Notes: generated by a model not told the origin, from the sequence alone. A stretch of 64,000 nt of DNA from Octopus sinensis (GCF_006345805.1 NC_043023.1:13516001-13580000), one strand, 5' to 3'. Shown: positions 11,956 to 53,459, numbered from the stretch's first letter. Numbers and translations are program-made.

Positions 11956-12069
11956 ATGGCGGCGTCAAGGAGAATGTGGCCACCACCGCTGAAACAGCGA
12001 CGGCCCGACACCTATGTCAGTTCAGTTCAGATTCAGTTGTTGGTCAACACACCAGTGGCATTTCCTTTG
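11956..12069 (+). CDS. Probable first coding exon of the RRM + low-complexity gene (MAASRRMWPPPLKQRRPDTYVSSVQIQLLVNTPVAFPL)
   Basis: ATG at 11956 just after a CAG; 38 codons ending at a strong donor TTG|GTGAGT (phase 0); non-repetitive island between microsatellites; QIQLLVNTP resembles RRM beta1/RNP2. Phase does not match the next visible exon, so an extra exon is needed. Confidence 0.55.
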
Positions 12070-12479
12070 GTGAGTATATATATGTATATATATTTATTGA
12101 TATGTATGTATTTATGTATGTATGCATGTGTGTATATATATATATGCATGTATGTATGTATGTCTGTATGTGTGTATGTATGTATGTATATATATATATG
12201 TATGTTTGTGTGTATGTATGTATGTATGTATGTACATATGTATGTATGTGTGTATGTATGTATGTATGTGTGTATGTATGTATGTGTGTATGTATGTATG
12301 TATGTGTGTATAATAAATGGATGTCTATGTACGTATGTATGTATATGTGTATGTATATACATCTGTGTTTGTTTATATATAAATGTACATGCATATGTAT
12401 GCATGCTTGTATATATGTATGTATGTATGTATGTATATGTGAAAGTATGTATGTATGTGTGTATGTATGTATGTATATA

Positions 12480-12579
12480 NNNNNNNNNNNNNNNNNNNNN
12501 NNNNNNNNNNNNNNNNNNNNNNNNNNNNNNNNNNNNNNNNNNNNNNNNNNNNNNNNNNNNNNNNNNNNNNNNNNNNNNN
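12480..12579. other. Assembly gap (100 N)
   Basis: Run of exactly 100 N, a typical unknown-size placeholder, next to a TATG microsatellite. Confidence 0.98.
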
Positions 12580-12771
12580 GATTTTCTGAATTACTACTAT
12601 TTAGCGGTTTGAGTTTGACTGCTCTTTCTAGTGAGTCGAATGGCCTATCAGGGCCATTTCCTTAATATTGTTGAAATTATATATATAAATAAGTCTGTGA
12701 CTATTTTCTCTTTCTCACTGGGCCGCTCGTGGCGAAAAAAATTTCTATTGAATTTTTTGCTACCCTTATAT

Positions 12772-12799
<28 letters not shown>

Positions 12800-12812
<13 letters not shown>

Positions 12813-13010
12813 AAGTTAATCCAAACAAGAGAGCACAAAAAAACACAACAACGCGAGGACATGGAACAAATATAGTATTATTGGACGCTCAGGAAAGAAG
12901 GAGGGTTTAACGTTTCGAGCGGAGCTCTTAGTCGGAAACATAGGAGAAGGAAAGATCCAGAGAAGGGAAGACAGAGGGAAAAAAATCACCAACGGTACAC
13001 ACGCGGTCAC
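12800..13010 (-). mobile_element. Dispersed repeat carrying the minimal hammerhead-like motif (probable Penelope-type terminus)
   Basis: Reverse-complement match to 46345-46535 over about 200 bp. Confidence 0.6.
12905..12939 (-). ncRNA. Degenerate copy of the minimal hammerhead-like motif (G8 lost)
   Basis: Minus strand GTTT-CCGACTA-A-GAG-CTCCG-CTC-GAAA-CG-TT-AAAC; same element family as 46423-46457. Confidence 0.3.
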
Positions 13011-13164
13011 ATTTTGAAAGACCCAAATTCGTGACAGTGGCGCGTGAGAGGCGTGAAGCGGAGTCCCTTACTGAGGAGAGAGCGCTCGGCAGCGGAGAGG
13101 GGGAGGTTGGGGAGGGTATAGTGACAACAGTGCGATATATAATATATATATATATATATATATA

Positions 13165-13640
13165 ATCATCATCGTTTAATGTCCTTTTTCTATGCTAGCA
13201 TGGGTTGGACGGTTTGTCCGGGGTCTGGGAAGCCAGGAGGCTGCACCAGGTTGCAGTCTGATCTGGCAGTGTTTCTTCAGCTGGATGCCCTTCCTAATGC
13301 CAACCACTCTATGAGTGTAGTGGGTGCTTTTTATGTGCCACCGGCACAGGGGCCAGAGGAGGCTGGCAAACGGCCACGATCAGTTGGTGTTTTACATGTC
13401 ACCGACATGGACACCAGTCAGGAGTCACTGGCAACTTCCACGTTCAGACGGTGCTTTAAACGTGTCACCGGCACGGGTATCTTAACTACAATTTCCATTT
13501 GATTTTCATTTTTATGTTGGTGTTGACGTACTTGACTCAATAGGTCTCCTCAAGAACAGCCAGGTCACTCTACGATCCAAGTTTAGCACAGCAGGCCGTC
13601 CCGCGATCCATGAACTCACTTCATATGTCGGGTCTTCACA
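13165..13640 (-). mobile_element. SINE-like family C ending in GGACGTTAAACGATGATGATG
   Basis: Shared core GTTGGCGTTAGGAAGGGCATCCAGC and (GAT)n tail; copies also at about 14685-15065, 16320-17460, 24899-25575, 30340-30800, 33425-33730, 34160-34720, 36770-37990, 39120-39300 and 40040-40310. Confidence 0.8.
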
Positions 13641-13693
13641 GTCACAGCATATATATATATATAATATATATATATATACACACATATGTATAT

Positions 13694-28194: not shown

Positions 28195-28493
28195 GACCAG
28201 CCTCATTGTGTTCCCGAAGGTCAAAAATGCCCTCTTTTACACCGACAAGAATCATTCGATCAAGCTCGACAGCCGACATTTATCAATTCGCTACCTCGGG
28301 CCTCAGAGCACAAAAATTGGCGGAGGCGGCGGAGGAGGAGGTGCCGGTAGTGGCGGCGGCGGCGGTAATAATAGTGTTTCTGGTGGCAACAAACCTGCCA
28401 CCGCTCCCGGCAGCAATCAGCCTAAGATTAAGCCCCGGAGTGAACCACCGCCCAAAGCTAATCCTCAGCCTGACCCGAAGCCTAAAGAGTCAG
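28195..28493 (+). CDS. Coding exon: C-terminal half of RRM1 (TSLIVFPKVKNALFYTDKNHSIKLDSRHLSIRYLG) plus Gly- and Pro/Lys-rich linker
   Basis: Polypyrimidine tract with tttcag| acceptor and cag|gtaagc donor; starts phase 2, ends phase 1, matching the next exon (G+AG = Glu). Confidence 0.88.
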
Positions 28494-28639
28494 GTAAGCA
28501 TGGAAACGAATCTGTTGTCGGCTACGGGCTGATGCATGCCTGCTTCTTCCTGCGTGTTGTCATCGTCATCATGGGTGCTTGTGTTGGTGAGGTCCGCTTG
28601 CTTGTGCGTACTTGTTTGTCATTTTCCACTGCTGACGGT

Positions 28640-28982
28640 CATAGCCATCATCATCACCATCACCACCATCATTGTCATCACTATCATCATCATCACCATT
28701 GTCATCATGGTTATTACCATCAATATCATCATCATCATCATCGTCATCACTATCATCATCATCATCACCATCATAATCATCATCACCATAATCATCATCA
28801 TCATCATTGTCATCATCACCACCATAGTCATCATCACCGTAATCATCACCACCACCATCATCATTATCGTCATCATCACCATCATAATCATCATCACCAT
28901 CATCATCGTCATCACCACCATCATCGTCATCATCACTATCATCATCATTGTAGTGTTTATAATTGTCGTTGTCATCATCCAT
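28640..28982. repeat. (CAT/CAC)n trinucleotide microsatellite in intron
   Basis: Direct reading. Confidence 0.95.
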
Positions 28983-29284
28983 GAATGGGGATTAACGACC
29001 GATCCCAGTAGGTCGGGATTCGCAATATTGGTTGTTCTATTCATCCTTTTGATTGTTGAATACAAAATGCGGCTTGTGAGACACTGGATGAAATGCTTAG
29101 CGACATTTCATCCACTTTGGCATTCTGAGTTCAAATTCTGCTGAGGTTGACTTTGCGTTTCATCCTTCCGGGTTGAGAAATTAAGTGTCAGTTGACTACT
29201 GGGGTTTGGTGTAATCAGCTCATCCCCTCCTGCAAAAGGGATGCCCTTGTGGCAAAATTTGAAACCATTATTATCATCATCATC

Positions 29285-30030: not shown

Positions 30031-31349
30031 CTGCATCAGGGCATCCATTGTTATTATTATTATCATTATTTTTATTATTATTATGGTGGTGAGCTAGCAG
30101 AAGCATTAGCATGCTGGATGAAATGCTTAGCAGTATTTCATCTGCCTTTGCATTCTGAGTTCAGATTCCACCATTCTGAGTTCAGATTGCCTTTCGTCCC
30201 TTTTGGGGCTCGATAAATTAAGTACCCGTAAAACACAGGGATTGATGAAATTGACTAGTCTCCACCTCCCACCCCCCAAAAAAATTTCAGGCCTTGTACC
30301 TCCAGTAGAAAGAATTATTATTATTATTATTAGGGCATTGGCCACGATTCGGATGGTGCTTTTTACGTGCCACCAGCACGGAAGCGCCGCCTCGACTGGC
30401 TTCCGTGCTGGTGGCACGTAAAATGCACCATCCGAATCGCGGCGATGCCAGCGTCGCCTCGACTGGCTTCTGTGCCGGTGGCACGTAAAATGCACCATCC
30501 GAATCGCGGCCGATGCCAGCGTCGCCTCGACTGGCTTCTGTGCCGGTGGCACGTAAAATGCACCAATCCGACCGTGTCCATTGCCAGCCTCCCCTGACAC
30601 CTGTGCCGGTGGCACGTAAAAAGCACCCACTACACTCATGGAGTGGTTGGCGTTAGGAAGGGCATCCAGCTGTAGAAACACTGCCAGATTTGACTGGGCC
30701 TGATGAAGCCTTCTGGCTTCACAGACCCCAGTAGAACCGTCCAACCCATGCTAGCATGGAAAACGGACGCTAAACGATGATGATGATGATGATGATGATG
30801 GCAGTGAGCTGGTAGAATTGTCAGCGAAATGCTTGGCTGTATTTTGTCCGTCTTTAAGTACCATTCAAATATTGGGGGCCTATTTGATCGACTAGCACCC
30901 CTCCTCCATCCAATTTCAGGCCTTGTGCCTCCGATAGAAAGGTTTATTGTTGTTGTTGTCAGCATTAAGGTCATGTTATAATCTGCTGTGGTCAGTATTT
31001 GAAAATGTTGTTGTTGTTATTATTATTATTATTATTATTATTGTTATTGTTATTGTTGTTGTTATTTTTTATTGATCTGTTAGTAGCAAAGATGACTGTC
31101 CCTTGCTCGGCTCGGCTGAATTCACATAACTAAATAAATACATACATTTTTGCCCTTTACCCTATTCCCTCAAAACCCTACACAACTCACAACCCTTTTC
31201 CGTCTTTAAGTACCAGTCAAGTACTGGGGGGGGGGGGGCGATGTGATCGACTATTCCCCCTCCTGCAAATTTCAGGCGTTGTCCCTTCAGTAAAAAGGAT
31301 TATTAAGATCATATTATAAACTGCTGCAGTCTGTATTTGAAAATATTGT

Positions 31350-32904: not shown

Positions 32905-33345
32905 GTGCGTCACAAAATAGGACCACAGAAAGAGAGGTGCTAAAGTCAGGCAGAGAGCAGCTCTGGAAAATCCTCGCTGAGCGATTTACGCACTATCTAG
33001 ACGAGGGAAGAATTCCCTCGCAGTGGAAAGAGTCAAATACCATCCTGCTGTATAAGAAGGGGCGCAGAGAAGATCTAAAGAACTACCGACCCATATGCCT
33101 GCTGTCTCACGTGTACAAGCTGTTCACGAAGTAATTATGAACAGGTTGTCACGTCGTCTCGACGAACAACAACCGAGGGAGCAAGCAGGCTTCCGGAAGA
33201 ACTACAGCACAATGGACCATATATTTGCTCTAACGCAACTGCTTGAGCGAGCAAATGAGTACAAGCTGCCTCTTTGCGTTGCGTTTATAGATTATGAGAA
33301 GGCCTTCGATAGCGTCGAAACCAATGCAGTGCTGAACTCGCTGCA
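32905..33345 (+). pseudogene. RTE-clade LINE reverse-transcriptase fragment
   Basis: WKESNTILLYKKG...NYRPICLLSHVYKLF, then after a frameshift EQAGFRKNYSTMDHIF...FIDYEKAFDSV. Confidence 0.88.
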
Positions 33346-33848
33346 GTTTGTTATATGGGAGTGAAAAATTCATTACAAATATAAGAGTAAATAATTATTA
33401 ATTTAATAATTGATAATAATTGATTGTCGGTGGCACGTAAAAAGCACCATCCGAATCGTAGCCGAAGCGAGTGCCGCCTCGACTGGCTTCCATAAAATGC
33501 ACCAATCCGACCGTGGCCGATGCCAGCCTCGCCTGGCACCAGTGCAGGTGGCACGTAAAAGGCACCCACTACACTCACGGAGTGGTTGGCGTTAGGAAGG
33601 GCATCCAGCTGTAGAAACACTGCCAGGTAAGACCGGAGCCTGGTGCAGCCTTCTGGCTTCCCAGATCCCAGTCGAACCATCCAACCCATGCTAGCATGGA
33701 AAACGGACGTTAAACGATGATGATGATGATGATAAATTTTACCAAGTAGTTTCGGTATGGAAAGAGAACCATTATCGGTAGGAATTTTTGTGTTATGTGT
33801 TAGTATGTATAAATGGTTATGTCTTCATCACTGGTTTTTCTTCTTCAG

Positions 33849-33972
33849 AGGATGACAAAATTGTGGTGATTCAAAATCTACCGAAAGGAATCGGTAAAAT
33901 TGGCGTGTTGCAGATTATCCCCACAGCAAAGAAGGTCAATTTTAAGGGGCCACCAAAGAAATCCAAGTTTGA
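33849..33972 (+). CDS. Coding exon: N-terminal half of RRM2 (EDDKIVVIQNLPKGIGKIGVLQIIPTAKKVNFKGPPKKSKF)
   Basis: ttcttcag| acceptor, ga|gtaagt donor; RNP2-like IVVIQNLP; phase 1 to 2 fits both neighbours. Confidence 0.9.
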
Positions 33973-36716: not shown

Positions 36717-38361
36717 TATATATACACACACATATATATATATATACACACACATACATAAACATATACATCATCATCATCATCATCATTTAACGTCCGC
36801 TCTCCATGCTAGCATGGGTTGGACGGTTCAACTGGGGTCTGGGGAGCCCGAAAGCTGCACCAGTCCAGTCAGATCTGGCAGTGTTTCTACAGCTGGATGC
36901 CCTTCCTAACGCCAACCACTCCGAGAGTGTAGTGGGTGATTTTATGTGCCACCGACACAGGTGCCAGACGAGGCTGGCAGACGGCCACGCTCGGATGGTG
37001 TTTTTTATGTGCCACCGACACAGGTGCCAGACGAGGCTGGCAGAGCCACGCTCGGATGGTGTTTTTATGTGCCACCGACACAGGTGCCAGACGAGGCTGG
37101 CGGACGGGCACGCTCGGATGGTGTTTTTATGTGCCACCGACACAGGTGCCAGATGAGGCTGGCAAACGGCCACGATCGGATGGTGCTTGTTACGTGCCCA
37201 CAGCACGGAGGCCAGTCGATGCGGTACTGGCTACGGCCACGTTCGGATGGTTTTCTTATGTGCCACGTGCCACCGGCACTGGTACCACAAAGATACAAAT
37301 TCCATTGATGTTCATCTATTTTGATTTGTTTGATGATTGATTTGATTTTCACTTGCCTCAACAGGTCTTCACAAGTGTCACAAGAAGGAAGGTATGCACA
37401 GGTGGACTGACTACGTCCCAGGTAGGGGCCATGGGTTATGGCCTGACTAGTCTTGCCGGGTCTTCGGATGTTGTTTTTATGTGCCACCGACACAGGTGCT
37501 AGATGAGGTGGCGAACGGCCACGATCGGATGGTGTTTGTCATGTGCCCACCGCACTGACTACGGCACTGATGGATTTCTTGTGTGCCACAGGCACTGGTA
37601 CCACAAGATACAAATCCATTGATTCCTCTATTTTGTCTATTTTGATTTGATTTGATTTGATTTTCACTTGCCTCAACCGGTCTTCACAAGTGTCACAAGA
37701 AGGAAGGAAGGTATGCACAGGTGGACTGACTAGTCTTGCCGGGTCTTCGGAAGGTGTTTTATGTGCCACCGACACAGGTGCCAGATGAGGCTGGCGAACG
37801 GCCATGATCGGATGGTGTTTGTTACGTGCCCACAGCACGGAGGCCGGTCGATGCGGAACTGGCTACGGCCACGTTCGGATGGTTCTCATGTGTGCCACCG
37901 GCACTGGTACCACAAAGTGTGTGTGCCACCGGCACTGGTACACAAAGATACAGATTCCATTGATGTTCATCTATCTGGATTTGTTTTGATTTGATTAATC
38001 ATAATATATATAATATATATATATATATCTCCATACATTGATACATACATACACACATACATATATATATGTGTATTGGAAGGTTTGGAGATGATGTACA
38101 GGTATTTTATATTAGAAGAAATGAGGTACTCAGAAATTGGGGTGGTTTTATATTTACAGATATTTATTTGTATATTATATGTTTTTATATATCGTATATC
38201 ATATATTAACGCTTTCATCCATTCTAGTGGAGTTGTCAAATTGAACTAAGTTCTTGGGGAAAATTTGACTATTTTTGCACGCACAGATATGTAGATACAC
38301 ACACACACACACACACGTGTGTGTGTGTATGTATATATATATATATATATATATATCAGTA

Positions 38362-38971: not shown

Positions 38972-39087
38972 GTCTGCCTTGTTGGAGTTCAACACTATAG
39001 CTCAGGCGAATGCTGTTATCAAGAAGAACGGTCAGTTGAGAGTTGGTGACCACACACTCTTCATTGAATCCATGACTAATCACAAAA
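38972..39087 (+). CDS. Coding exon: C-terminal half of RRM2 (SALLEFNTIAQANAVIKKNGQLRVGDHTLFIESMTNHK)
   Basis: ccttgcag| acceptor, a|gtaagt donor; phase 2 to 1; beta3-alpha2-beta4 pattern of an RRM. Confidence 0.9.
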
Positions 39088-39990
39088 GTAAGTCGCACCC
39101 TTTGTTCATATTATATTCTATCGTGGCACATAAAATCACCCACTACACTCTCGGAGTGGTTGGCGTTAGGAAGGCCATCCAGCCGTAGAAACACTGCCAG
39201 ATCAGACTGGAGCCTGGTGCAGCCTTCGGGCACCCCAGACCCCAGTTGAACCGTCCAACCCATGCTAGCATGGAAAGCGGACGTTAAACGATGATGATGT
39301 GTCCCTGACAAACCCATCGCAGACCCAGAAATAGGGACCCTGCAAACTTGTTACACACACACACACACATCCACACGCACATAGAAACCGTTGGGCACCT
39401 TCTCATAATTTTTGATAACTTGGCTAAGAATTTTTAGCCAAAGTATCAACACACTGGTTTTTTTTAACGTTTAAAAAAAAATATTTTTTTAGCCTGTTTG
39501 TTTCTTTGGCCAAACTGCGAAGTTACGAGGACATAAACATACCAACACCAGTTGTCGAGCAGTGGTGGGACGTGAGTATGCACACACACACACACATGCG
39601 ATGGGCTTCTTTTAGTTTCCGTCTACCAAATCCATTCACAAGGCTTTGGTCAGCTCGTGGTTATAGTAGAAGACACTTGCCCAAGGTGCCACGCAGTGGG
39701 ACTGAACCTGAAACCATGTGGTTGGGAAGCACATCTTCACATATATGTGTGTTTGTGCGTATATATGACGGGCTTTTTTCAGTTTCCATCTACTAAATCC
39801 ACTTACAAGACTTTGGTTGGCCCCCAAACTATAGTAGAAGGCACTTGCCCAAGATGCCTCACAGTGGGACTGAACCTGGAACCATGTGGTTGGGAAACAA
39901 GCTACTTACCACACAGCGATGCCTGTGCCTATTACCCATGCATGCATGTATATATATAAATATCTGTGTATGTGTGTGTGTGTGTGTTTT

Positions 39991-40037
<47 letters not shown>

Positions 40038-40668
40038 TCCGTGCCGGTGGCACGTAAAATACACCAATCCGATCGTGGCTGTTGCCAGCCTTGTCTGGCA
40101 CCTGTACGGGTGGCATGTAAAAAGCACCCACTATACTCTTGGAGTGGTTGGCGTTAGGAAGGGCATCCAGCTGTAGAAACACTGCCAGATCAGACTGGAG
40201 CCTGGTGCAGCCTTCAGGCTCCCCAGATCCCCGGTCGAACCGTCCAACCCATGCTAGCATGGAGAACGGACATTAAACGATGATGATAACGATGATGATG
40301 ATGATATATAATAATGCATGTGTGTGTATATATGTATATACGACAAGCTTCTTTCAGTTTCCATTTACCAAATCCACTATAGTTTGGTTGGCCTCAAACT
40401 ATAGTAGAAGGCACTTGCCCAAGGTTCCATACACAGTGGAACTGAACCCAGAACCATGTGGTTGGGAAGCAATCTTCTTACCATACACACTCACGCTAAA
40501 ACCCTTTTAAAAAAAAATACGTAATTTATAACAAAATTCAGATGACCTCAAGTCCTCCTTGTCGGCTAACTTCTTTTCAACGTCAACTGTAATCTTTATG
40601 CCCTCCAACACCTTTGACTGTTCACCAATACAAGCTGTTCCTAAAGAGAAAAAAATGTCAATGTTAAA

Positions 40669-40839: not shown

Positions 40840-40892
<53 letters not shown>

Positions 40893-41400
40893 GCGTGTGT
40901 GTGTTTGTGTGTCTGTGTTTGTCTCCCTAGCATTGCTTGACAACCGATGCTGGTGTGTTTATGTCCCCGTTACTTAGCGGTTCGGCAAAAGAGGCCAATA
41001 GAATAAGTACTGGGCTTACAAAAGAATAAGTCCCGGGGTTGAGTTGCTCGATTAAAGGCGGTGCTCCAGCATGGCCGCAGTCAAATGACTGAAACAAGTA
41101 AAAGAGTAAACTTAGCGGTTCGGCAAAAGAGACCGATAGAATAAGTACTGGGCTTACAAAAGAATAAGTCCTGGGGTTGAGTTGCTCGATTAAAGGCGGT
41201 GCTCCAGCATGGCTGCAGTCAAATGACTGAAACAAGTAAAAGAGTAAACTTAGCAGTTCGGCAAAAGAGGCCGATAGAATAAGTACTGGGCTTACAAAAG
41301 AATAAGTCCCGGGGTTGAGTTGCTCGATTAAAGGCGGTGCTCCAGCATGGCCACAGTCAAATGACTGAAACAAGTAAAAAGAGTAAAAAAAAAGAAAGAG
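40669..41400 (+). mobile_element. Family A SINE with its 3' part triplicated (about 138-bp period)
   Basis: TTAGCGGTTCGGCAAAAGAG...GTAAAAGAGTAAAC repeated three times. Confidence 0.82.
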
Positions 41401-41775: not shown

Positions 41776-44700
41776 TGGAAGGTGTTTGTAAGCCATTTAA
41801 GAAACACACAAAAGCCGTTCGATTCACTTCAACATTTAAATTTAATTTGTCAAAATATTTTCGTCGCTTTGAGACCGCGACCTGTTCACTGACAAAAATA
41901 TATTGGAAGGTGTTTATAAGCCATTTAAGAAACACACAAAAACCGTTAGATTCACTTCAACGTTTAAATTTAATTTGTCAAAATATTTTCGTCGCTTTGA
42001 GACCGCGACCTGTTCACTGAGAAAAATATATTGGAAGGTGTTTATAAGCCATTTAAGAAACACACAAAAACCGTTAGATTCACTTCAACATTTAAATTTA
42101 GTTTGTCAAAATATTTTCATCGCTTTGAGACCGCGACCTGTTCACTGAGAAAAATATATTGGAAGGTGTTTATAAGCCATTTAAGAAACACACAAAAACC
42201 GTTAGATTCACTTCAACATTTAAATTTAATTTGTCAAAATATTTTCATTGCTTTGAGACCGCGACCTGTTCACTGAGAAAAATATATTGGAAGGTGTTTA
42301 TAAGCCATTTAAGAAACACACAAAAACCGTTAGATTCACTTCAACATTTAAATTTAATTTGTCAAAATATTTTCATCGCTTTGAGACCGCAACCTGTTCA
42401 CTGACAAAAATATATTGGAAGGTGTTATAAGCCATTTAAGAACACACAAAAACCGTTAGATTCACTTCAACATTTAAATTTAATTTGTCAAAATATTTTC
42501 GTCGCTTTGAGACCGCGACCTGTTCACTGAGAAAAATATATTGGAAGGTGTTTATAAGCCATTTAAGAAACACAACAAAAACCGTTAGATTCACTTCAAC
42601 ATTTAAATTTAATTTGTCAAAATATTTTCGTCGCTTTGAGACCGTGACCTGTTCACTGAGAAAAATATATTGGAAGGTGTTTATAAGCCATTAAGAAACA
42701 CACAAAAACCGTTAGATTCACTTAACATTTAAATTTAATTTGTCAAAATATTTTCGTCGCTTTGAGACCGCGACCTGTTCACTGAGAAAAATATATTGGA
42801 AGGTGTTATAAGCCATTTAAGAAACACACAAAAACCGTTAGATTCACTTCAACATTTAATTTAATTTGTCAAAATATTTTCGTCGCTTTGAGACCGCGAC
42901 CTGTTCACTGAGAAAAATATATTGGAAGGTGTTTATAAGCCATTTAAGAAACACACAAAAACCGTTAGATTCACTTCAACATTTAAATTTAATTTGTCAA
43001 AATATTTTCGTCGCTTTGAGACCGCGACCTGTTCACTGAGAAAAATATATTGGAAGGTGTTTATAAGCCATTAAGAAACACAAAAACCGTTAGATTCACT
43101 TCAACATTTAAATTTAATTTGTCAAAATATTTTCGTCGCTTTGAGACCGCGACCTGTTCACTGAGAAAAATATATTGGAAGGGTTTATAAGCCATTTAAG
43201 AAACCCACAAAAACCGTTAGATTCACTTCAACATTTAAATTTAATTTGTCAAAATATTTTCGTCGCTTTGAGACCGCGACCTGTTCACTGAGAAAAAATA
43301 TTGGAAGGTGTTTATAAGCCATTTAAGAAACACAAAAACCGTTAGATTCACTTCAACATTTAAATTTAATTTGTCAAAATATTTTCGTCGCTTTGAGACC
43401 GCGACCTGTTCACTGACAAAAATATATTGGAAGGTGTTTATAAGCCATTTAAGAAACACACAAAAACCGTTAGATTCACTTCAACATTTAAATTTAATTT
43501 GTCAAAATATTTTCGTCGCTTTGAGACCGCGACCTGTTCACTGAGAAAAATATATTGGAAGGTGTTATAAGCCATTTAAGAAACACAAAAACGTTAGATT
43601 CACTTCAACATTTAAATTTAATTTGTCAAAATATTTTCGTCGCTTTGAGACCGCGACCTGTTCACTGAGAAAAATATATTGGAAGGTGTTATAAGCCATT
43701 TAAGAAACACACAAAAACCGTTAGATTCACTTCAACATTTAAATTTAATTTGTCAAAATATTTTCGTCGCTTTGAGACCGCGACCTGTTCACTGAGAAAA
43801 ATATATTGGAAGGTGTTTATAAGCCATTTAAGAAACACAAAAACCGTTAGATTCACTTCAACATTTAAATTTAATTTGTCAAAATATTTTCGTCGCTTTG
43901 AGACCGCGACCTGTTCACTGAGAAAAATATATTGGAAGGTGTTTATAAGCCATTTAAGAAACACACAAAAACCGTTAGATTCACTTCAACATTTAAATTT
44001 AATTTGTCAAAATATTTTCGTCGCTTTGAGACCGCGACCTGTTCACTGAGAAAAATATATTGGAAGGTGTTTATAAGCCATTTAAGAAACACACAAAAAC
44101 CGTTAGATTCACTTCAACATTTAAATTTAATTTGTCAAAATATTTTCGTCGCTTTGAGACCGCGACCTGTTCACTGAGAAAAATATATTGGAAGGTGTTT
44201 ATAAGCCATTTAAGAAACACAAAAACCGTTAGATTCACTTCAACATTTAAATTTAATTTGTCAAAATATTTTCGTCGCTTTGAGACCGCGACCTGTTCAC
44301 TGAGAAAAATATATTGGAAGGTGTTATAAGCCATTTAAGAAACACAAAAACCGTTAGATTCACTTCAACATTTAAATTTAATTTGTCAAAATATTTTCGT
44401 CGCTTTGAGACCGCGACCTGTTCACTGAGAAAAATATATGGAAGGTGTTTATAAGCCATTTAAGAAACACACAAAAACCGTTAGATTCACTTCAACATTT
44501 AAATTTAATTTGTCAAAATATTTTCGTCGCTTTGAGACCGCGACCTGTTCACTGAGAAAAAATATTGGAAGGTGTTTATAAGCCATTTAAGAAACACACA
44601 AAAACGTTAGATTCACTTCAACATTTAAATTTAATTTGTCAAAATATTTTCGTCGCTTTGAGACCGCGACCTGTTCACTGAGAAAAATATATTGGAAGGT

Positions 44701-44936
44701 GTTTATAAGCCATTTAAGAAACACAAAAACCGTTAGATTCACTTCACATTTAAATTTAATTTGTCAAAATATTTTCGTCGCTTTGAGACCGCGACCTGTT
44801 CACTGAGAAAAATATATTGGAAGGTGTTTATAAGCCATTTAAGAAACACACAAAAACCGTTAGATTCACTTCAACATTTAAATTTAATTTGTCAAAATAT
44901 TTTCGTCGCTTTGAGACCGCGACCTGTTCACTGACA
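41776..44936. repeat. 128-bp satellite, about 25 copies, inside a fold-back element
   Basis: Unit TGGAAGGTGTTTATAAGCC...GTTCACTGAGAAAAATATAT; ORF starts spaced 128 apart; the inverted arm follows at 44971-45082. Confidence 0.96.
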
Positions 44937-45304
44937 AAATTCCATACTGCATCACTGCAGTATGGAATTTCAAAAGCGACGAAAATATTTTGACAAATTA
45001 AATTTAAATGTTGAAGTGAATCGAACGGCTTTTGTGTGTTTCTTAAATGGCTTACAAACACCTTCCACGCTGTAATTGTTTTTGATTATAGAACCCAGCT
45101 TAGTATCATTAGCTCTGTGGGCAGTGATGATGGGGAGATGCAGGAACGAAGGAGGGAGGTGTATAAAAATTGTTGTTAGCTCTGTGTGCAGTGATGATAA
45201 GATGTGTGAAGGAGGGAGGCATCTTCCAATTTAGGTTTCCATAGCAACTAATGCTCTCTCTCTCCCCTCCTACTCCACACTCTCTTTCTGATTTTCATTG
45301 GCAG

Positions 45305-45519
45305 GGCGGCCGAAGAACCAACTCGAAGGACCTTTCCATGAACAGACTCCCCCAAAGTCATCCAACGAGGCCAAAGACAGAGGTGGTGGCGGTGGCAATG
45401 ACAAATCCAACCAACAGAAAATGGCGCAGGGAGCCATGGGTTCCGGCCCCAACGAGGACAAGCGCTTTGTGTTTATGAGTAAGCGCGGAGGTGACCAACA
45501 GCAATCTCTTGGTCCAGAG
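45305..45519 (+). CDS. Coding exon: disordered linker (RPKNQLEGPFHEQ...GGDQQQSLGPE)
   Basis: Pyrimidine tract with ggcag| acceptor; gag|gttggt donor; phase 1 to 0; GC-rich unique island. Confidence 0.82.
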
Positions 45520-46457: not shown

Positions 46458-46643
46458 CCTTCTTTCCTGAGCATCCAATAATACTATATTTGTTCCACAT
46501 CCTCGCGTTATATTTTTTTTTGTGCTTTCATGTTTGGATCAACTGTATGTATATAGGTGTGTATGTATGTATGTGTGTGTGTATATATATATGTGTGTGT
46601 GTATAGTGTCTCTAATGACTTGAACTGTTTTTTTTATTTTCAG

Positions 46644-46696
46644 ATGGGCCAGTATGAGAAAGATTTAACAAACCTTTTCAACTTTCCCAAAGCTGG
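46644..46696 (+). CDS. Short coding exon (MGQYEKDLTNLFNFPKA)
   Basis: tttttcag| acceptor, gg|gtaaat donor; 53 nt, phase 0 to 2, exactly bridging the flanking exons. Confidence 0.82.
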
Positions 46697-46744
46697 GTAA
46701 ATATTACTATTTTTATTATTATTATTATTATTATAATATATGTG

Positions 46745-47322
46745 AGGTATACTAGCCATCTCAATATGGCTAAGCACTAAGGGTTGGTGTTACTGTAGCT
46801 TTTAGCCCCAGGAGATCATCGTCTCCAGCTGGCTTTAGGCACACTTTCTGTGCACTTATGGTATTTGCAAAGGGAGGTCATCCCTCTCTCGTAAACCTAA
46901 GTGATACGCACGTACTGCAGTAACACCCACCCTTAGTGGTTAGCCATATTGAGATGGCTAGTATACCTTACATTGTCGTGCAGTTACTGTTTATACCTCG
47001 TTCAGAAATTTATTATTGCTTGCATACAGTTTTTCGAGATCAGTGATGAAAAGTTACTGGAAAAACGATATAAGGATTTGCATTGGGTCTCCCTTCATCG
47101 AAAACCGGTGATTACCGTACGTTGACAAGAGGCAAATACCTCAAAACTGCAGTCCATGCGTGTCACTTAGGTTTACAAGAGAGGGATGACCTCCCTTTGC
47201 AAATACCATAAGGACACAGAAAGTGTGCCTAAAGCCAGCTGGAGACGATGATCTCCTGGGGCTACAAGCTACAGTAACACCCACCCTTAGTGCTTAGCCA
47301 TATTGAGATGGCTAGTATACCT
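46745..47322. mobile_element. MITE-like element with about 50-bp terminal inverted repeats plus an inverted partial duplicate
   Basis: Arms 46745-46795 and 46918-46968; 46745-46920 is the reverse complement of 47147-47322. Confidence 0.75.
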
Positions 47323-48189
47323 TACATTGTCGTGCAGTTACTGTTTACATCTCGTTCAGAGATTTATTATTGCTATTATTATATATTTTAAACTTTAATA
47401 TTTTATATGTTTTGCTAGTGAAAGTCGGTGAAAATGCTTGACTTAGCAGTTGTGGTTTTGCACTCAGAATTGCAGGGTCATAGTTTCCACTGCAGGACCG
47501 GGCAGTGACATTGTGCCTCGGAGCGCAACACTTCATTTCATGTTGCTCTGCGATCACTTCTGCTTCTGATCCGTGACGCAATGTGCATCTTCTCCAGGCA
47601 ACGTTGAAGGCATGTGATCTAGTGGTTTCGGTTTTGCACTCCTAATCGCAGGATCATCGGTTCAATTCTTGGTTCGGGTGGTGTGTTGTATTCTTGATTT
47701 GCTCTGCAATCAATTTGACACCCGATGCGGGGCTACGCTGTGGCCCCTGTACAGGCAATGTCAGTTGGATGGAGTGAATGAGGGAGCTAATGTACATGGC
47801 ATATATTTCATCATTATCACGTGACTGACCAGACCATCAGATGTTGTTACACATCGCTGGTCACAATGCGTTTGCATTGTTTTAGCCTTCGAATGACGCC
47901 ACCCCACTGGCTAAGCGAGCAGGCCAACAGAAGAAAGAGTGGGTGAAAGAGTACAGCAGGGATCGCCACCCCCTGCCGGAGCCTCGTGGAGCTTTTAGGT
48001 GTTTTCGCTCAATAAACACTCACAACGCCCGGTCTGGGAATCGAAACCGCGAATCTGCTGCCCTAACCACTAGGCCATTGCGCCTCCACATTTCATCATT
48101 ATAAACGAATCATATGTACAAGGAATTACTGAAAGCAAATGTTTAATGGTGATGATTAATAATATAGGTTCATTCTTAATGAAATTGGG

Positions 48190-49245
48190 CTGCAAGCTGC
48201 CTGGTGACCTCACTGGTGTTGGTGCCACATAAAAAGCTCCCAGTAGACTCTGTAAAGGGGTTAGCATTAGGAAGGGCATCCAGCCATAGAAACCATACAA
48301 AAGCAGACCTCATTGGTGCTGGTACCGCATTAAAAGCACCCAGTACACTCTGTAAAGTGGTTGGCATTAGGAAGGGCATCCAGTACACTCTGTAAAGTGG
48401 TGGGCATTAGGAAGGGCATCCAGCCATAGAAACCATACCAAAGCAGACCTCACTGGTGCTGGTGCCACATAAAAAGCACCCAGTACACTCTGTGGAGTGG
48501 TTGGCATTAGGAAGGGCATCCAGTACACTCTGTAAAGTGGTGGGCATTAGGAAGGGCATCCAGCCATAGAAACCATGCCAAAGCAGACCTCACTGGTGCT
48601 GGTGCCACATAAAAAGCACCCAGTACACTCTGTGGAGTGGTTGGCATTAGGAAGGGCATCCAGTACACTCTGTAAAGTGGTGGGCATTAGGAAGGGCATC
48701 CAGCCATAGAAACCATGCCAAAGCAGACCTCACTGGTGCTGGTGCCACATAAAAAGCATCCAGTACACTCTGTGGAGTGGTTGGCATTAGGAAGGGCATC
48801 CAGTACACTCTGTAAAGTGGTGGGCATTAGGAAGGGCATCCAGCCATAGAAACCATGCCAAAGCAGACCTCACTGGTGCTGGTGCCACATAAAAAGCACC
48901 CAGTACACTCTGTGGAGTGGTTGGCATTAGGAAGGGCATCCAGTCATAGAAAACATACCAAAGCAGACCTCACAGGTGCTGGTGCCACATAAAAAGCACC
49001 CAGTACACTCTGTAGAGTGGTTGGCATTAGGAAGGGCATCCAGCCATAGAAACCATACCAAAGCAGACCTCACTGGTGCTGGTTCCACATAAAAAGCACC
49101 CAGTACACTCTGTGGAGTGGTTGGCATTAGGAAGGGCATCCAGCCATAAAAACCATGCCAAGTAGCCATCAGAGCTTGCAATAGTCTTCTGTCAAACTGT
49201 CCAACCCATGCCAGCATGGAAAATAGACATTAAATGATGATGATG
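48190..49245 (+). repeat. Tandem array of family C modules (alternating about 40- and 80-bp pieces) ending in the family C tail
   Basis: CAGTACACTCTGT..AGTGG.TGGCATTAGGAAGGGCATC repeated more than 12 times. Confidence 0.88.
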
Positions 49246-49441
49246 TAAATGTTTAATTGACCTTTCTTTCTCTCCCTTTTCTCCTCTTCCCTCTCTCTTT
49301 CCTCTTCTTTTTCTCCGCTTCCCTCTCTCCTCCTTCCTCTTCCTTTTCTCTTCCTTTCCCCTTACCCATCTATCTCCTTCTCCGCCGTATTATGCATAAA
49401 CATTACTTAATCCCTTTTTTTTTTCTCTCTCTTTCATTTAG

Positions 49442-52400
49442 GACCAACCCTGCTGCTCTCCAGTACGGCTTGGCTGCTCTGGAGAACTTGTTATCGCGGG
49501 CCGCAAAAATGGGGATGAATGAGCTGAAGAGCCTATTAACGGCGAACCCCCGACTGCACCAACTCTTTGCAGAGAACCAGGACTTTCAGCCCCGCCTGCA
49601 GAAGTTGTTTGCCCATAACCAGGACTTCCAACCCCAGCTGAAACGGTTGTTTGCTGCAAATCAGGTTTTCCTTCCCAAACTGCAAATGCTTATTGCAGCC
49701 TCCAGCCAGCAGCAACAGAGCAAAGAGAACCTCAACTTCAACATGGGGTCCCTCGGTCCCTTCGGACCTCACGGGCCCCTCCGACCGCAAGGTCACCCGA
49801 TGGGGCCACCCCAGGGCTCCATGAGGCCACCGTCGGGATCTGTCAGGCCGTCGCAAGGATCTGGCCGGATGATGCAGGGCCCGGGCGGGCCGCCGATGAG
49901 CATGCAGGAGCAGCAAGCGTTTAAGAAAGAGATGATGGTGAGACAACAGCGCCGGATGTACAGTGCGGCACGTGGCGCCGCCGACGACGAGGAGGAGGAG
50001 GAGGAGGAGGAGGATGATAACAACGAAAGGGGTTACCGCGAGGAGCAAGGATTCGGCAACGCTCGGAACTTCCCCGGCAGGGACGGCGGCTCTGGGCCCT
50101 GGCCGAAACAGGACGAGGGTCGGTCCCAGCCGCACCCTAGAATGTTTGACGAGGAGCCAGGCTTTCCCTTCCGTCGCCGTATGAACTTTGAGGGCGACGA
50201 CGATGATAGAAGACCCCCGTCTCAGCACCACCATCACCGCCGCCAACAGCAGCAGCAACAACAACAACAGCAGCATCATCATCATCATCAACAACATCAA
50301 CAAAAACAGCCAATGTTTACAGAAGAGATGGAGGAATTTGCTGAAAAGCAGCGTGTGCTGTACGACCAGGAGAGCGAAAACCGTGACCGGCCGCCGGCCT
50401 CCCCCTCCTCCAAGCGCCGTATGTTCGGGGCGAACGAGGACTCGATGTATAGCGAGGACCAGGCGCTGCTACACTCGGGGAGACAGCAAGGGTTTTACAA
50501 GGGCAGAGGTGGGGGCGACGATGACGACTTTGCTCCCCCCCACAAGCGACGGGCGATATACGTCGACGAACCCGAGAGGGGAGGACCGAATCGCCATCAG
50601 AGGCCCTTCGGAGGCGGCGGAGGAGGAGGAGGTGGAGGTGGTGGAGGAGATAACCTGCAAGATTTTAATGAGGGCCCTAGAATGTATGGGGCTTTTGGCG
50701 GCAGCGGTGGTGGTGGTGGGAGAGACAATTTTGGTGGTGGTGGTGGTGGTGGCGGCGGAAGAGATAACTTTGGCGGTGGTGGTGGTGGTGGTGGCGGAAG
50801 AGACAACTTTGGCGGTGGTGGTGGTGTCGATCCCAGCAACCAGGAAGGAGGAGGCTTTGATGGATCTCGGAACAGGGAGTATCCAGGCTCCAGACCTTAC
50901 GACGAATTTAGACATCGCGGAGGTGGCGGCAATGGTGGTGGTGGTGGTGGCCGTCTTGGCGTGGAAGACGACCGTATGGGAGGAGACGCTGGCGGACGGA
51001 AATCCCGGGAGATGTTCGACGAAAACATGGACTTTCCTAACCGAAATCCGAAGATGTTTGGACACAACGAGCCTTTCCATAGTCACGGGGGTAGCGACAG
51101 CTTTTCGGGGTCAATGATGCCCCCTCAACAATCCAATTTGGACACGAGCGCTCCCGGCCCCAGCATTGGTGAAACGAAACTCAACTACGTCTCCTTTGAT
51201 TATAACCACCAGCACTCTAATGTTCCCCTAACGGACATGGAGCCGTTCAGTAACAACCCCGGAAATTTCTCAGCCGGTGGCGCTGGCAGTGTTTCGCCCT
51301 CGTCCATGATGGGACAGGACAGCGGCAACAACGCCCCCTACGATAGGCACGGCCCCTCCATGTCGAGAAGTGCTGGAGGCGACGATGGTAACCAGTTTGG
51401 CCAGAGGGGTATGGAACCGTCTGGTCCTGGTTTTGACAACGAAATGGATCAGTCGTACTCCTCGCGGGACGACCAGTTTGGCCAGAGGCCCCCTCAGTTT
51501 GGTGTCGGTTCGAGAAACCTGAAGTCAGCCCTGAAGAATAGCTCTGCTTATAGGTTTGAGGACAGTTCCATGTCGGCCGGGAACTCCGACCAGGGCAAGG
51601 ACGTTCATAGCGGTGACTTTGGCAGTAACAACAACAACAACCGGATGTCAGATCCGAGTGAAAATCCGGACTCTGGAAGGGGTTTCAGGGACCGGGACCA
51701 TGAAGAGAGAGACACGTTTATGGGCACTTGGAGGAGCCCCCTTGGTATGGGAAACTACCAGCAGGAGAGAGGAGACGACGTGGGCAGACCCGGAAGCGGG
51801 TTCGGTGATGATATGAGCGGCAACAGACAGATGGATGACACGGCCAGTGTGGAGCAGCAGCAGATGTCGGGCAGCGGTAGCTTCCATGGGAATATGGATC
51901 GTGGCGGGTTTCAGTACGGTGGGAATGCGAGGGGTCAGTCCGACGGCGGAGAGGATTTCCCGGATTGGGGCCGCCAGAGGGACGGCGAAAACGAGGGTTT
52001 TGGAGTCGGGAGGGATAGCAGCGGTGGTGCTGGTGACAGTGGTCGTAGGATGCAGATGGGCGAGTCCCACGACTACGGACACAAGAGCAGTGAGGGCTAT
52101 AACAGGTATTACGGTAGTGGTGGTGGTGGTGGTGGTGGCGGTGGCGGCGGTAGTGATAGCCTCGGTGATGACAGACCTTCCTACCCCAGCCGTGGCGCCA
52201 ACAAAAACAACGACGACGACATCGAAGATCCTGGTTACAACGTGAAGTGGGGCCAAGGGGTCGGTAGCCTGGATCGAGGTTCGTCGAGGGAACGTAGCTG
52301 GATGTCCCGGGGCGACCCTGCGGACTATCGCCGCGTCGAGGACGACAACAACAACGACGACGACGATAGGGGCAAAGGGGCCGGTTACGGTTTCCAGTCG

Positions 52401-53459
52401 GACAGCGAGAACAGAGGGAGCCACTTGTACGAGGACAACTGGCAGCAGAGCGGGGATTACCGCCACCACGATAGCAAGTCGGATTATCCGGGAGACGGAG
52501 CTGGTGGTCATAGAATCGAGTCGTCGTTCCGGCGCGGGGTCAGCTACGGCCGAGACGAGGACCTGGAAGAACCGGCGCGCGATGAGGAGGCCCCGTACTA
52601 TCGTTCCGGCAGGAGTGTTGCGTTTGAGAGGGACAACTATAGTTATAACGAGGAATATGACAATGGCGGTAACGAGAGTAATACTAATGTGGATGAAGGC
52701 GGTTATTATAGTGGGGGCGGGGCTGCTATGGAGCAGAATTTGTCCGACGATAGGGAGAGCTACAGAAGGCAGGAGAGATATGGGGAGCAGAAAATGGAAG
52801 AGGATTTTGAACAGGACGGCTCTGATCCTCCCCTTGGCTGGAGAAGCTCCTCATCGAAACAGGACGGCTCTGACCCTCCGCTTGGCTGGAGAAGCTCTTC
52901 ATCGAAACAGGACGGCTCTGACCCACCGCTTGGCTGGAGAAACCCCGGGTCGAAACAAGACGGCTCCGACCCTCCGCTCGGCTGGAGAAACCCCGCGTCG
53001 AAACAGGACGGTCCCGACCCCCCGCTCGGCTGGAGGAACCACAAGTATTTTTCCTCGTCGCCATCCAAGTCGGATCCCCCGTCCTCGTCGAGGAGGGGCC
53101 GGGACGACGCGGAAGGTGGCGGCAGCTGGGAGAGGAACCAACGCGGTTCTGGGTACCACGGCGACCGATCCGGCGGGGAACAAGGGCATCGAAGAGGGCG
53201 GTCGTCGCGCAGTAACCGGTCGTACGGCCGCAATTCCAACCGCGACAGAGCAGGATCGAGGTGCGGCGGCGGCGGTGGTGGTCGAGGTTCCTACGGCGAC
53301 GCGTCCGAAGGTGACGCGAATACCGGCGGCGGCAGCAAGGAGGACCAGTACGGGCAAGACACGATGCGGAAGGTCGTAATGTCGAGGGACTGGAAAGGCG
53401 ACGGAGGAGGCGGAGGGGAGATGATGCGTCGCCACCACAAGCAGTCGAGGTGGAACTAA
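49442..53459 (+). CDS. 4-kb terminal coding exon: about 1338-aa mostly low-complexity G/Q/D/R/S-rich region with internal repeats
   Basis: Long pyrimidine tract with ttag| acceptor at 49441; phase 2 start; stop-free to TAA 53457-53459; GC-rich against AT-rich flanks; repeat units differ mostly at synonymous positions. Confidence 0.93.

What the first reader, a model, noticed from the sequence alone, without database searches (positions are those of the whole stretch)
11956..53459. Unrecognised RNA-binding protein: two degenerate RRMs plus about 1400 aa of low-complexity tail
Seen: six exons join in one frame with canonical splice sites (4825 nt = 1 nt + 1608 codons), and both RRMs have a phase-2 intron just before beta3. 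Knowledge: tandem RRMs plus a G/RGG/Q-rich disordered tail is the layout of condensate-forming RBPs (nucleolin, hnRNP A, FET). Inference: I cannot match this exact architecture (no acidic N-terminus, very long tail with Trp repeats) to a named family, so it may be a lineage-specific RNP-granule scaffold.
Basis: partly seen in the sequence, partly recalled or inferred. Interest (0 to 1): 0.72.

Follow-up and report, generated by a model that had tools for sequence, protein, structure and literature searches.

The report
Orphan octopus-type disordered protein gene
This is a real but 5'-incomplete gene for a roughly 1,600-residue, mostly disordered protein with one weakly recognisable PTB/hnRNP L-like RNA-recognition motif, half of a second, and no detectable relative in very large protein databases; it is a modestly interesting lineage-restricted gene rather than a new kind of system.

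Summary
Five of the six exons hold up. Exons 28195-28493, 33849-33972, 38972-39087, 45305-45519 and 49464-53459 have AG/GT borders and join into one open frame of 4750 nt (1 nt + 1582 codons + stop). The first exon does not. In its ATG-11956 frame it ends in phase 0, but exon 2 needs phase 2. In the frame that does join there is a TGA at 11990-92 and only 19 residues from ATG 12014. The N gap (12480-12579) is intronic and breaks no exon, but it could hide a missing ~80-nt exon. Pfam and PDB sequence searches find no RRM. Against 27 bona fide RRMs, domain 2 scores above chance (best-of-27 shuffles 16/5000) and is closest to hnRNP L, Matrin-3 and PTB RRMs. "RRM1" is only a C-terminal half with marginal support. 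About 1,245 of the 1,331 residues of exon 6 look disordered (G/S/R/D-rich; AF2 mean pLDDT 33). Exon 6 has only 4 RGG. It carries five 16-residue DPPLGW repeats whose core varies almost only synonymously. No homologue turned up among 1.84 billion representatives, although Octopus RefSeq proteins are in the related word-indexed collection. Verdict: a real, unmatched gene. The RNP-scaffold function is untested inference.

The parts
11956..12069 (+). Putative first exon, unverified. The ATG-11956 frame reads MAASRRMWPPPLKQRRPDTYVSSVQIQLLVNTPVAFPL and ends in phase 0 at a TTG|gtgagt donor. It is out of frame with exon 2. The alternative frame, which does join exon 2, has a TGA at 11990-92 and an ATG at 12014 (19 aa).
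   Evidence: no significant similarity to exon 3 or to RRM profiles
12480..12579 (.). Assembly gap (100 N) inside a (TG/TA)n microsatellite. It is intronic and crosses no exon frame. It could hide the missing ~80-nt exon (length 2 mod 3) needed to link exon 1 to exon 2.
   Evidence: no candidate exon found in the assembled intron
28195..28493 (+). Exon 2 (299 nt, 1 nt + codons, ends in phase 1). It encodes TSLIVFPKVKNALFYTDKNHSIKLDSRHLSIRYLG, a beta3-alpha2-beta4-like half of 'RRM1', followed by a Gly-run and a Pro/Lys-rich linker.
33849..33972 (+). Exon 3 (124 nt, ends in phase 2): first half of domain 2, DDKIVVIQNLPKGIGKIGVLQIIPTAKKVNFKGPPKKSKF (beta1-alpha1-beta2-like).
38972..39087 (+). 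Exon 4 (116 nt, ends in phase 1): second half of domain 2, (E)SALLEFNTIAQANAVIKKNGQLRVGDHTLFIESMTNHK. It has an RNP1-like strand without aromatic residues and a PTB-like S/T-x-H-K tail.
   Evidence: local RRM HMM 10.5-11.5 bits, above all 300 shuffles; hhalign P=6.9e-4; best pairwise match hnRNP L RRM1
45305..45519 (+). Exon 5 (215 nt, ends in phase 0): polar linker. Its donor GAG|gttggt is weak and is the least secure junction in the model.
49464..49721 (+). Start of exon 6: an ~86-residue helical region with three NQDFQPxLxKLFA-type units. It is the only ordered-looking part of exon 6.
   Evidence: AF2 helices at residues 3-86, pLDDT 64-79 for residues 1-60 and falling below 55 after about residue 60; hydrophobicity scan; 42-nt tandem repeat; no Foldseek match in PDB
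49722..53459 (+). Rest of exon 6: ~1245 residues of G/S/R/D/Q/N-rich low-complexity sequence. It includes acidic runs, a poly-Q/H tract, Gly runs, 3 x RDNFGGGGGGGGG (50706-50826), six [RKP]-M-[FY]-[DGT] motifs and an RG-rich C-terminus, with the TAA stop at 53457-53459.
   Evidence: AF2 mean pLDDT 32.6, 1169/1200 residues below 50
52812..53051 (+). Five tandem 16-residue units, QDGSDPPLGWR + a 5-residue spacer. In the 11-codon core, 7 of 8 variable codon columns differ only synonymously; all 5 spacer codons change the residue.

Best explanation
The locus is a real, intron-rich, protein-coding gene of an Octopus-type genome whose 5' end is not resolved in this window. Exons 2 to 6 encode at least 1582 residues. 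In order they are: the C-terminal half of one small RRM-like domain, a Gly/Pro linker, one complete but degenerate RRM-like domain, a polar linker, an ~86-residue helical repeat region, and about 1245 residues of intrinsically disordered sequence.

The complete domain is closest to the PTB/hnRNP L/Matrin-3 class of RRMs. It has no aromatic RNP1/RNP2 residues and ends in a TNHK tail after the last strand.

Inferred mechanism: the small N-terminal module anchors the protein to RNA, or to a partner protein as PTB-class and pseudo-RRMs often do. The helical repeats may self-associate. The long tail supplies many weak contacts. It has 112 aromatic and 124 Arg residues spread through a Gly/Ser/Asp spacer, plus repeated short motifs (5 x DPPLGW, 6 x R/K-M-F-D/G, 3 x RDNFG-Gly9). 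Together these would make a multivalent scaffold of a ribonucleoprotein assembly.

Shown: the exon structure of E2 to E6, coding periodicity, the repeats, purifying selection on the DPPLGW core, the lack of detectable homologues, and above-chance resemblance of domain 2 to RRMs. Inferred: the RRM fold, any RNA binding, disorder-driven assembly, and the whole cellular role.
For: Exon model and single open frame.

Coding signal: codon-position composition and GC3 in exon 6. The 1400-codon ORF compares with 349 codons or fewer elsewhere in the window.

Selection on the peptide: 7 of 8 variable codon columns in the QDGSDPPLGWR core are synonymous-only, while all 5 spacer codons change.

RRM resemblance of domain 2:
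- Local HMM of 27 RRMs: 11.5 bits against a shuffle maximum of 4.2.
- hhalign P=6.9e-4.
- Best pairwise hit hnRNP L RRM1, then Matrin-3 and PTB RRM1; family-wise shuffle test 16/5000.
- PTB-class HMM 9.8 bits, 0/1000 shuffles.
- Three of the comparators were verified identical to PDB 3r27, 1x4f and 1sjq.

Exon 2 half-domain: 8/1000 shuffles reach its PTB-class score. It shares intron position and phase with exon 4.

Disorder: composition and hydrophobicity scan; AF2 mean pLDDT 32.6 over 1200 residues. Helical head.
Against: - No Pfam RRM-clan hit, even at E<=10 on the isolated domains. No PDB RRM by phmmer at E<=10. BLASTP of domain 2 against hnRNP L RRM1 finds nothing. hhalign probability is only 27%.
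- The N-terminal half of domain 1 is absent from the assembly in frame.
- The E5/E6 junction needs a weak donor.
- There is no transcript, orthologue or expression evidence of any kind.
- RGG boxes are few (4), so the 'RGG-rich RBP tail' analogy is loose.
- Low pLDDT without an alignment is weak evidence of disorder.
Confidence: 0.45

Rival explanations
1. The protein is a scaffold but not an RNA binder. The degenerate RRM-like domains are protein-interaction modules (pseudo-RRMs), and function lies in the short linear motifs of the tail, for example the five DPPLGW units acting as tryptophan hooks for a partner.
For: The aromatic residues that stack on RNA in canonical RRMs are missing: RNP2 reads VVIQNL and RNP1 reads FESALLEF (sequence). 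The DPPLGW core is under purifying selection. Trp units sit 16 residues apart in a disordered context.
Against: PTB-class RRMs also lack these aromatic residues and still bind RNA (established knowledge). No partner is known. There is no Pfam Ago-hook, GW182 or other motif-family hit.
Confidence: 0.22
2. It is a fast-evolving orthologue of a known bilaterian PTB-class RRM protein, of the Matrin-3/RBM20/ZNF638 or hnRNP L kind. Its remaining defining parts (zinc finger, further RRMs, true N-terminus) would lie upstream of the window or in the gap, and its disordered tail has diverged beyond recognition.
For: The best pairwise matches of domain 2 are hnRNP L RRM1, Matrin-3 and PTB RRM1, and exon 2's top four are PTB3, PTB1, hnRNP L and Matrin-3. 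The 5' end of the gene is missing. Disordered tails evolve quickly (established knowledge).
Against: No U1/matrin-type zinc finger is present: there is one Cys in the 1331 residues of exon 6 and no Pfam hit. True PTB/hnRNP L/Matrin-3 RRMs find each other at E of about 1e-6 to 1e-17, whereas domain 2 finds none at E<=10. No homologue appeared in the databases.
Confidence: 0.15
3. The gene model is partly wrong. Exons 2-5 and the large exon 6 could belong to different transcripts, or further small exons are missing, so the 'two RRMs plus tail' architecture would be an artefact of choosing splice sites to keep a frame open.
For: E1 does not join E2 in frame. E5/E6 works only with a weak donor and the second AG, while a stronger donor 41 nt upstream breaks the frame. 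Stringent splice-site pairs with an open frame occur about 30 times per strand in this window by chance. There is no transcript evidence.
Against: E2, E3 and E4 have near-consensus sites (pyrimidine tract + cag|, |gtaag) and compatible phases. Both halves of domain 2 lie in adjacent exons and together give the RRM-like signal. Exon 6 has no plausible start codon of its own, because its ORF upstream of 49464 is a polypyrimidine tract.
Confidence: 0.13
4. It is a decaying or non-functional locus (pseudogene), with the exon 1 / exon 2 frame clash as the first sign of decay.
For: Frame mismatch at the 5' end. There is no annotated protein matching it, although Octopus RefSeq proteins are in the word-indexed collection.
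Against: 1583 codons remain open across five exons. Codon periodicity is strong. Variation in the repeat core is synonymous-only. The clash is as easily explained by the assembly gap.
Confidence: 0.05

Closest known systems
PTB / hnRNP L / Matrin-3 / RBM20-class RRMs
   Same: Domain 2 aligns end to end (beta1 to beta4) with hnRNP L RRM1, Matrin-3 and PTB RRM1. It shares the non-aromatic RNP1 of the 'Q-A-[LF]-[IVL]-E-[FM]' type (here SALLEF). It also has a short basic tail after beta4 (here MTNHK, against SNHK in PTB and STSQK in hnRNP L).
   Different: Similarity is far below what true family members show to each other (against 12). Helix alpha1 is short and Gly-rich. No zinc finger, no four-RRM array and no PTB-type linker are present. 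A 1,400-residue disordered tail follows.
FET proteins, hnRNP A/B and nucleolin
   Same: General layout of a folded RNA-binding-type module plus a long Gly-rich low-complexity region with scattered aromatic and Arg residues. The RDNFGGGG units recall hnRNP A-type Gly-rich tails.
   Different: There are no canonical RRMs (Pfam negative), no RanBP2 zinc finger, no SYGQ domain and no acidic N-terminal stretches. Exon 6 has only 4 RGG triplets and a net charge of about -46.
GW182/TNRC6 and other GW/WG 'Ago-hook' proteins
   Same: Tryptophans preceded by Gly and embedded in polar disordered sequence, repeated at spacings over 10 residues. A degenerate RRM sits in the same polypeptide.
   Different: Only five GW units, all one recent tandem repeat. 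There is no Ago_hook, UBA or PAM2 match. The RRM-like domains are N-terminal rather than in a C-terminal silencing domain.
Lineage-specific granule organisers (Oskar, Bucky ball/Velo1, MEG-3; from general knowledge)
   Same: A taxon-restricted, largely disordered protein without recognisable homologues outside its lineage.
   Different: No expression, localisation or genetic data exist here. The resemblance is conceptual only.

Membership tests
RRM (Pfam PF00076 and clan CL0221) | Match to a curated RRM-clan profile at or near the gathering threshold | tested here: not met
   hmmscan of the whole protein at E<=1 and of the isolated domains at E<=10 found no RRM-clan family.
RRM (Pfam PF00076 and clan CL0221) | Similarity to bona fide RRM sequences above chance | tested here: met
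   Domain 2: 11.5 bits against a shuffle maximum of 4.2; hhalign P=6.9e-4 but probability 27%; best-of-27 shuffle test 16/5000. Exon 2 half: marginal, 8/1000 with the PTB-class HMM and 200/2000 pairwise.
RRM (Pfam PF00076 and clan CL0221) | Aromatic residues at RNP2 position 2 and RNP1 positions 3 and 5 | tested here: not met
   RNP2 reads VVIQNL and RNP1 reads FESALLEF; exon 2 reads TSLIVF (sequence).
RRM (Pfam PF00076 and clan CL0221) | beta-alpha-beta-beta-alpha-beta fold | not testable with these tools
   Domain 2 is split by a 5-kb intron, and the structure tool refuses spliced sequences. Only the order of hydrophobic and polar segments fits.
Matrin-3 / RBM20 / ZNF638 | U1/matrin-type C2H2 zinc finger next to PTB-like RRMs | tested here: not met
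   No Pfam zinc-finger hit; one Cys in the 1331 residues of exon 6. The N-terminus upstream of exon 2 is unknown.
PTB / hnRNP L | Four PTB-class RRMs that match family members strongly | tested here: not met
   At most two domains are present. PDB phmmer finds no PTB or hnRNP L chain at E<=10, while true members hit each other at about 1e-6 to 1e-17.
FET (FUS/EWS/TAF15) | SYGQ-rich N-terminal domain, canonical RRM, RanBP2 zinc finger, RGG boxes | tested here: not met
   No Pfam hits; 4 RGG in the 1331 residues of exon 6; no zinc finger.
hnRNP A/B and nucleolin | Two (or four) canonical RRMs; for nucleolin, acidic N-terminal stretches and a C-terminal GAR domain | tested here: not met
   Pfam negative. 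The acidic runs lie inside the tail, not at the N-terminus. The C-terminus is RS/RG-rich but is not a GAR repeat.
GW182/TNRC6 | N-terminal GW-repeat Ago-binding domain, UBA, Q-rich region, PAM2, C-terminal RRM | tested here: not met
   No Ago_hook, UBA or PAM2 hit. Five GW units near the C-terminus and 14 Trp in all. The domain order is reversed.

The most novel reading that the evidence does not exclude
A cephalopod-restricted GW-type adaptor. The five selectively maintained DPPLGW units, spaced 16 residues apart, would act as tryptophan hooks for Argonaute/PIWI or CCR4-NOT pockets. The PTB-like pseudo-RRM module and helical repeats would bring in RNA or self-association. That would be an independently evolved functional analogue of GW182, built on a different domain order.
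Probability: 0.06. Interest if true: 0.7.

Novelty: new member of a known kind. Interest (0 to 1): 0.33.

Why it matters
If the model is right, this is a large protein that standard annotation and profile searches do not recognise, in a group of animals known for unusual RNA biology. It shows how a very degenerate PTB-class RRM joined to a 1,300-residue disordered tail escapes detection. It also offers a concrete candidate (the conserved DPPLGW array) for motif-level experiments. On present evidence it does not open a long-standing question. Taxon-restricted disordered proteins are common, and nothing here links this one to a specific process.

Tried and rejected
1. Rejected: the ATG-11956 frame does not join exon 2, and the joining frame has a stop and gives 19 unrelated residues. 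It scores 0.3 bits against the RRM HMM, and hhalign probability is 0.8%.

2. Search for the missing first half of domain 1 in the window. Nothing plausible came from any of four scans:
   - A beta1-motif scan of 1-28194.
   - All phase-2 donors with at least 28 open codons, scored with the RRM HMM.
   - tblastn of exon 3 and of exons 3+4 against the window.
   - All AG..GT exons of length 2 mod 3 in intron 1, scored as E1+X+E2 and against exon 3.

3. Homologue searches.
   - Two word-indexed searches of the N-terminal 300-424 residues: none.
   - Exhaustive phmmer of exon 6 residues 1-1200: one hit, E=5e-6. It is a repeat-on-repeat match to a 265-residue metagenomic protein with an N-terminal hydrophobic segment and tandem MRW(A/N)RHG(G/R)KQDADDE repeats, which I read as a neuropeptide-precursor type and rejected as spurious.

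4. Exact look-ups of exon 6 ORF products: not on record.

5. Other searches with no result: Foldseek of the helical head against PDB, and Rfam over the window. The only weak Pfam lines were Mto2_bdg (E=0.1) and TipE (E=4.5), dismissed as noise.

6. Alternative E5/E6 splice pairings: all three break the frame.

7. Similarity between paralogous exons. Exon 2 against exon 4 is marginal (113/2000 shuffles). Exon 1 against exon 3 shows none.

8. Literature searches for a described cephalopod protein of this kind, or for invertebrate Matrin-3/RBM20/ZNF638 homologues: nothing relevant.


Full report
**Exon structure**

I read the sequence at each proposed exon and rebuilt the model. Five exons are solid.

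| Exon | Coordinates | Length (nt) | Acceptor | Donor |
|---|---|---|---|---|
| E2 | 28195-28493 | 299 | ttcatttcag\| | \|gtaagc |
| E3 | 33849-33972 | 124 | tcttcttcag\| | \|gtaagt |
| E4 | 38972-39087 | 116 | ctccttgcag\| | \|gtaagt |
| E5 | 45305-45519 | 215 | tcattggcag\| | \|gttggt |
| E6 | 49464-53459 | 3996 | tgctctccag\| | stop TAA 53457-59 |

Joined, they give 4750 nt, which is 1 nt + 1583 codons, with a single stop at the very end.

Of the four possible E5/E6 pairings, only 45519|49464 keeps the frame open. A stronger donor after 45478 and the first AG at 49441 both lead to early stops. That junction is therefore the least secure.

Under stringent splice-site rules about 30 open 'exons' per strand occur in this window. 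Single exons are thus not remarkable by themselves. Four things together are:
- the chain of compatible phases;
- the two halves of one domain lying in adjacent exons;
- the absence of a plausible start codon for exon 6;
- a 4-kb terminal ORF.

**The first exon and the assembly gap**

In that frame a TGA lies at 11990-11992, there is no acceptor, and the only ATG is at 12014. The product would start MSVQFRFSCWSTHQWHFLW and then run into exon 2.

The ATG at the stated start, 11956, is in a different frame. It reads MAASRRMWPPPLKQRRPDTYVSSVQIQLLVNTPVAFPL and ends in phase 0 at a good donor (TTG|gtgagt). Exon 2 needs a phase-2 predecessor, so the two cannot be joined: 114 + 4750 is 1 nt over a multiple of three.

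'IQLLVNTP' does recall the beta1 strand 'IVVIQNLP' of exon 3. The resemblance is not statistically supported.

If exon 1 is real, a further exon of about 80 nt (length 2 mod 3) must lie between it and exon 2. Four scans of the assembled intron and of the whole upstream region found nothing credible.

The 100-N gap at 12480-12579 sits in a (TG/TA)n microsatellite. It is 410 nt past the exon 1 donor and 15.6 kb before exon 2. It is intronic in every model, and no exon frame crosses it. Its true length is unknown, however, and it is the obvious place for a missing exon. The 5' end of the gene is therefore unresolved. It may also lie upstream of the window.

**Is it coding?**

Exon 6 shows strong codon periodicity: third-position A is 6-20% and C 29-42% in every 600-nt block, and GC3 is 0.64. 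Its 1400-codon ORF compares with 349 codons or fewer for any other ORF in the window.

The 48-nt repeat at about 52810-53040 encodes five QDGSDPPLGWR units, each followed by a 5-residue spacer.
- In the 11-codon core, 7 of the 8 variable codon columns differ only synonymously.
- All 5 spacer codons change the residue.

This is the pattern expected if the peptide motif itself is under selection.

**Are there RRMs?**

Curated profiles say no.
- Pfam found nothing in the whole protein at E<=1, and nothing RRM-like in the isolated domains at E<=10.
- phmmer against all PDB sequences found no RRM.

The three best-matching ones proved identical to PDB 3r27 (hnRNP L), 1x4f (Matrin-3) and 1sjq (PTB).

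Results for domain 2 (exons 3+4):
- It scored 11.5 bits against an HMM of the panel; the maximum of 300 shuffles was 4.2.
- hhalign gave P=6.9e-4 but only 27% probability.
- In pairwise Smith-Waterman alignment it matched hnRNP L RRM1 best (score 52), then Matrin-3 and PTB RRM1. The alignments run from beta1 to the S/T-x-H/Q-K tail after beta4.
- Only 16 of 5000 shuffles reached that best-of-27 score.
- An HMM of the seven PTB-class members gave 9.8 bits, reached by 0 of 1000 shuffles. The canonical-only HMM gave 6.3 bits, reached by 2 of 1000.
- BLASTP of domain 2 against hnRNP L RRM1 reports nothing, which shows how weak the signal is.

Results for the exon 2 peptide (TSLIVFPKVKNALFYTDKNHSIKLDSRHLSIRY):
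- Its four best pairwise hits are all PTB-class.
- It is only marginal: 8/1000 shuffles with the PTB-class HMM and 200/2000 pairwise.
- Against exon 4 it scores at p of about 0.06.
- It shares with exon 4 the position and phase of the preceding intron.

My reading is one complete, very degenerate PTB-class RRM-like domain, and half of a second whose other half is not in the assembled sequence.

**The rest of the protein**

The first ~86 residues of exon 6 are predicted helical. pLDDT is 64-79 for the first 60 residues without an alignment and drops below 55 beyond that. They contain three NQDFQPxLxKLFA-type units. Foldseek found no PDB match.

The remaining ~1245 residues have no ordered-looking window. 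AF2 gave a mean pLDDT of 32.6, with 1169 of 1200 residues below 50. This is weak evidence, since no alignment was available.

Composition of exon 6:

| Residue(s) | Share or count |
|---|---|
| G | 18% |
| S | 11% |
| R | 9% |
| D | 9% |
| Q, E, P, N | 6% each |
| F | 4% |
| M | 4% |
| Y | 3% |
| W | 1% |
| I, C, T, V | almost none |
| Net charge | about -46 |
| RGG / RG / GR / FG | 4 / 20 / 21 / 15 |
| Trp | 14 |

Repeated short motifs are 5 x DPPLGW, 3 x RDNFG-Gly9 and six [RKP]-M-[FY]-[DGT] sites. 'RGG-rich' is an overstatement.

**Relatives**

- Two word-indexed searches with the N-terminal 300-424 residues found nothing.
- An exhaustive phmmer pass of exon 6 residues 1-1200 over 1.84 billion representatives gave one hit (E=5e-6). 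It is a repeat-on-repeat match to a short metagenomic tandem-repeat protein, and I reject it.

As a calibration I searched the LINE reverse-transcriptase fragment in intron 2. It matches Octopus RefSeq proteins at up to 88% identity. The window is therefore from an Octopus-type genome, and at least some Octopus RefSeq proteins are in the word-indexed collection. I infer that a proteome is represented, and that the related representative library covers it too, but neither was tested directly. On that reading the gene is either unannotated there or too divergent to be found. I could not search other cephalopod genomes directly.

**Interpretation**

The safest statement is that this is a real, 5'-incomplete gene for a long, mostly disordered protein with a small PTB-like RRM module at the front.

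The most likely role is as a multivalent scaffold in an RNA-protein assembly. The degenerate RRM(s) would provide RNA or partner binding. The helical repeats may provide self-association. The aromatic/Arg-studded tail and its conserved motifs would provide many weak contacts. All of this is inference from anatomy.

Rivals are listed in the Rival explanations section:
- a pure protein-interaction scaffold;
- a highly diverged member of the Matrin-3/RBM20/ZNF638 or hnRNP L kind, with its other parts outside the window;
- a partly wrong gene model;
- a decaying locus.

The protein fails every tested defining feature of FET, hnRNP A/B, nucleolin, GW182 and the Matrin-3 family. I file it only as a new member of the broad kind 'RRM-like module plus low-complexity tail'.

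**Score**

Interest is 0.33. The gene is unrecognised and has a neat, testable motif array. However, taxon-restricted disordered proteins are common, the RRM evidence is weak, the 5' end is unresolved, and nothing ties it to a process.

Noticed in passing
window 32937-33364 (+), intron 2: Frameshifted fragment of a LINE reverse transcriptase (PF00078). Its best named matches are Octopus 'jockey-like' RefSeq proteins at up to 88% identity, which identifies the window as an Octopus-type genome.
   Followed up: partly
window 41776-44939, intron 4: A 128-bp satellite of 25 copies at 97% identity (3.2 kb). A second array of 138-bp units lies at 41000-41387.
   Followed up: no
window 48240-49161, directly upstream of the exon 6 acceptor: Tandem array of 100-140-bp units (97% identity) built from a SINE-like element. 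The same element, whose translations read [14 protein letters not shown]... or [10 protein letters not shown]..., recurs in both orientations throughout the introns, for example at 13179-13502, 17177-17530, 24937-25383, 30127-30744, 33351-33689, 36806-37340 and 39859-40260.
   Followed up: no
window 28560-28984, just after the exon 2 donor: Long (CAY)n microsatellite that reads as poly-His in the exon 2 frame and poly-Asp on the other strand. It is intronic, but a read-through of the exon 2 donor would add a His-rich tail.
   Followed up: no
window 49750-53500 (exon 6): CpG observed/expected is about 0.8-1.5 across the whole exon at 55-65% GC, so there is no CpG depletion. In invertebrates with gene-body methylation this usually marks sparsely methylated genes with restricted expression (inference).
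   Followed up: no
window 33972 and 49442: Exon 3 ends in phase 2, and the first AG acceptor of exon 6 (exon start 49442) needs a phase-2 predecessor. Skipping exons 4-5 would therefore stay in frame and remove the second half of domain 2. This is a possible alternative isoform, but it is untested.
   Followed up: no
window 2569-3075, 6730-7434, 9943-10450, 19300-20467, 24143-26686: Very dense (TA/TG/CA)n and related microsatellites. They generate long spurious ORFs on both strands (translations such as YIYIYI or CMYVCM), including the ORFs that appear to span the assembly gap.
   Followed up: no
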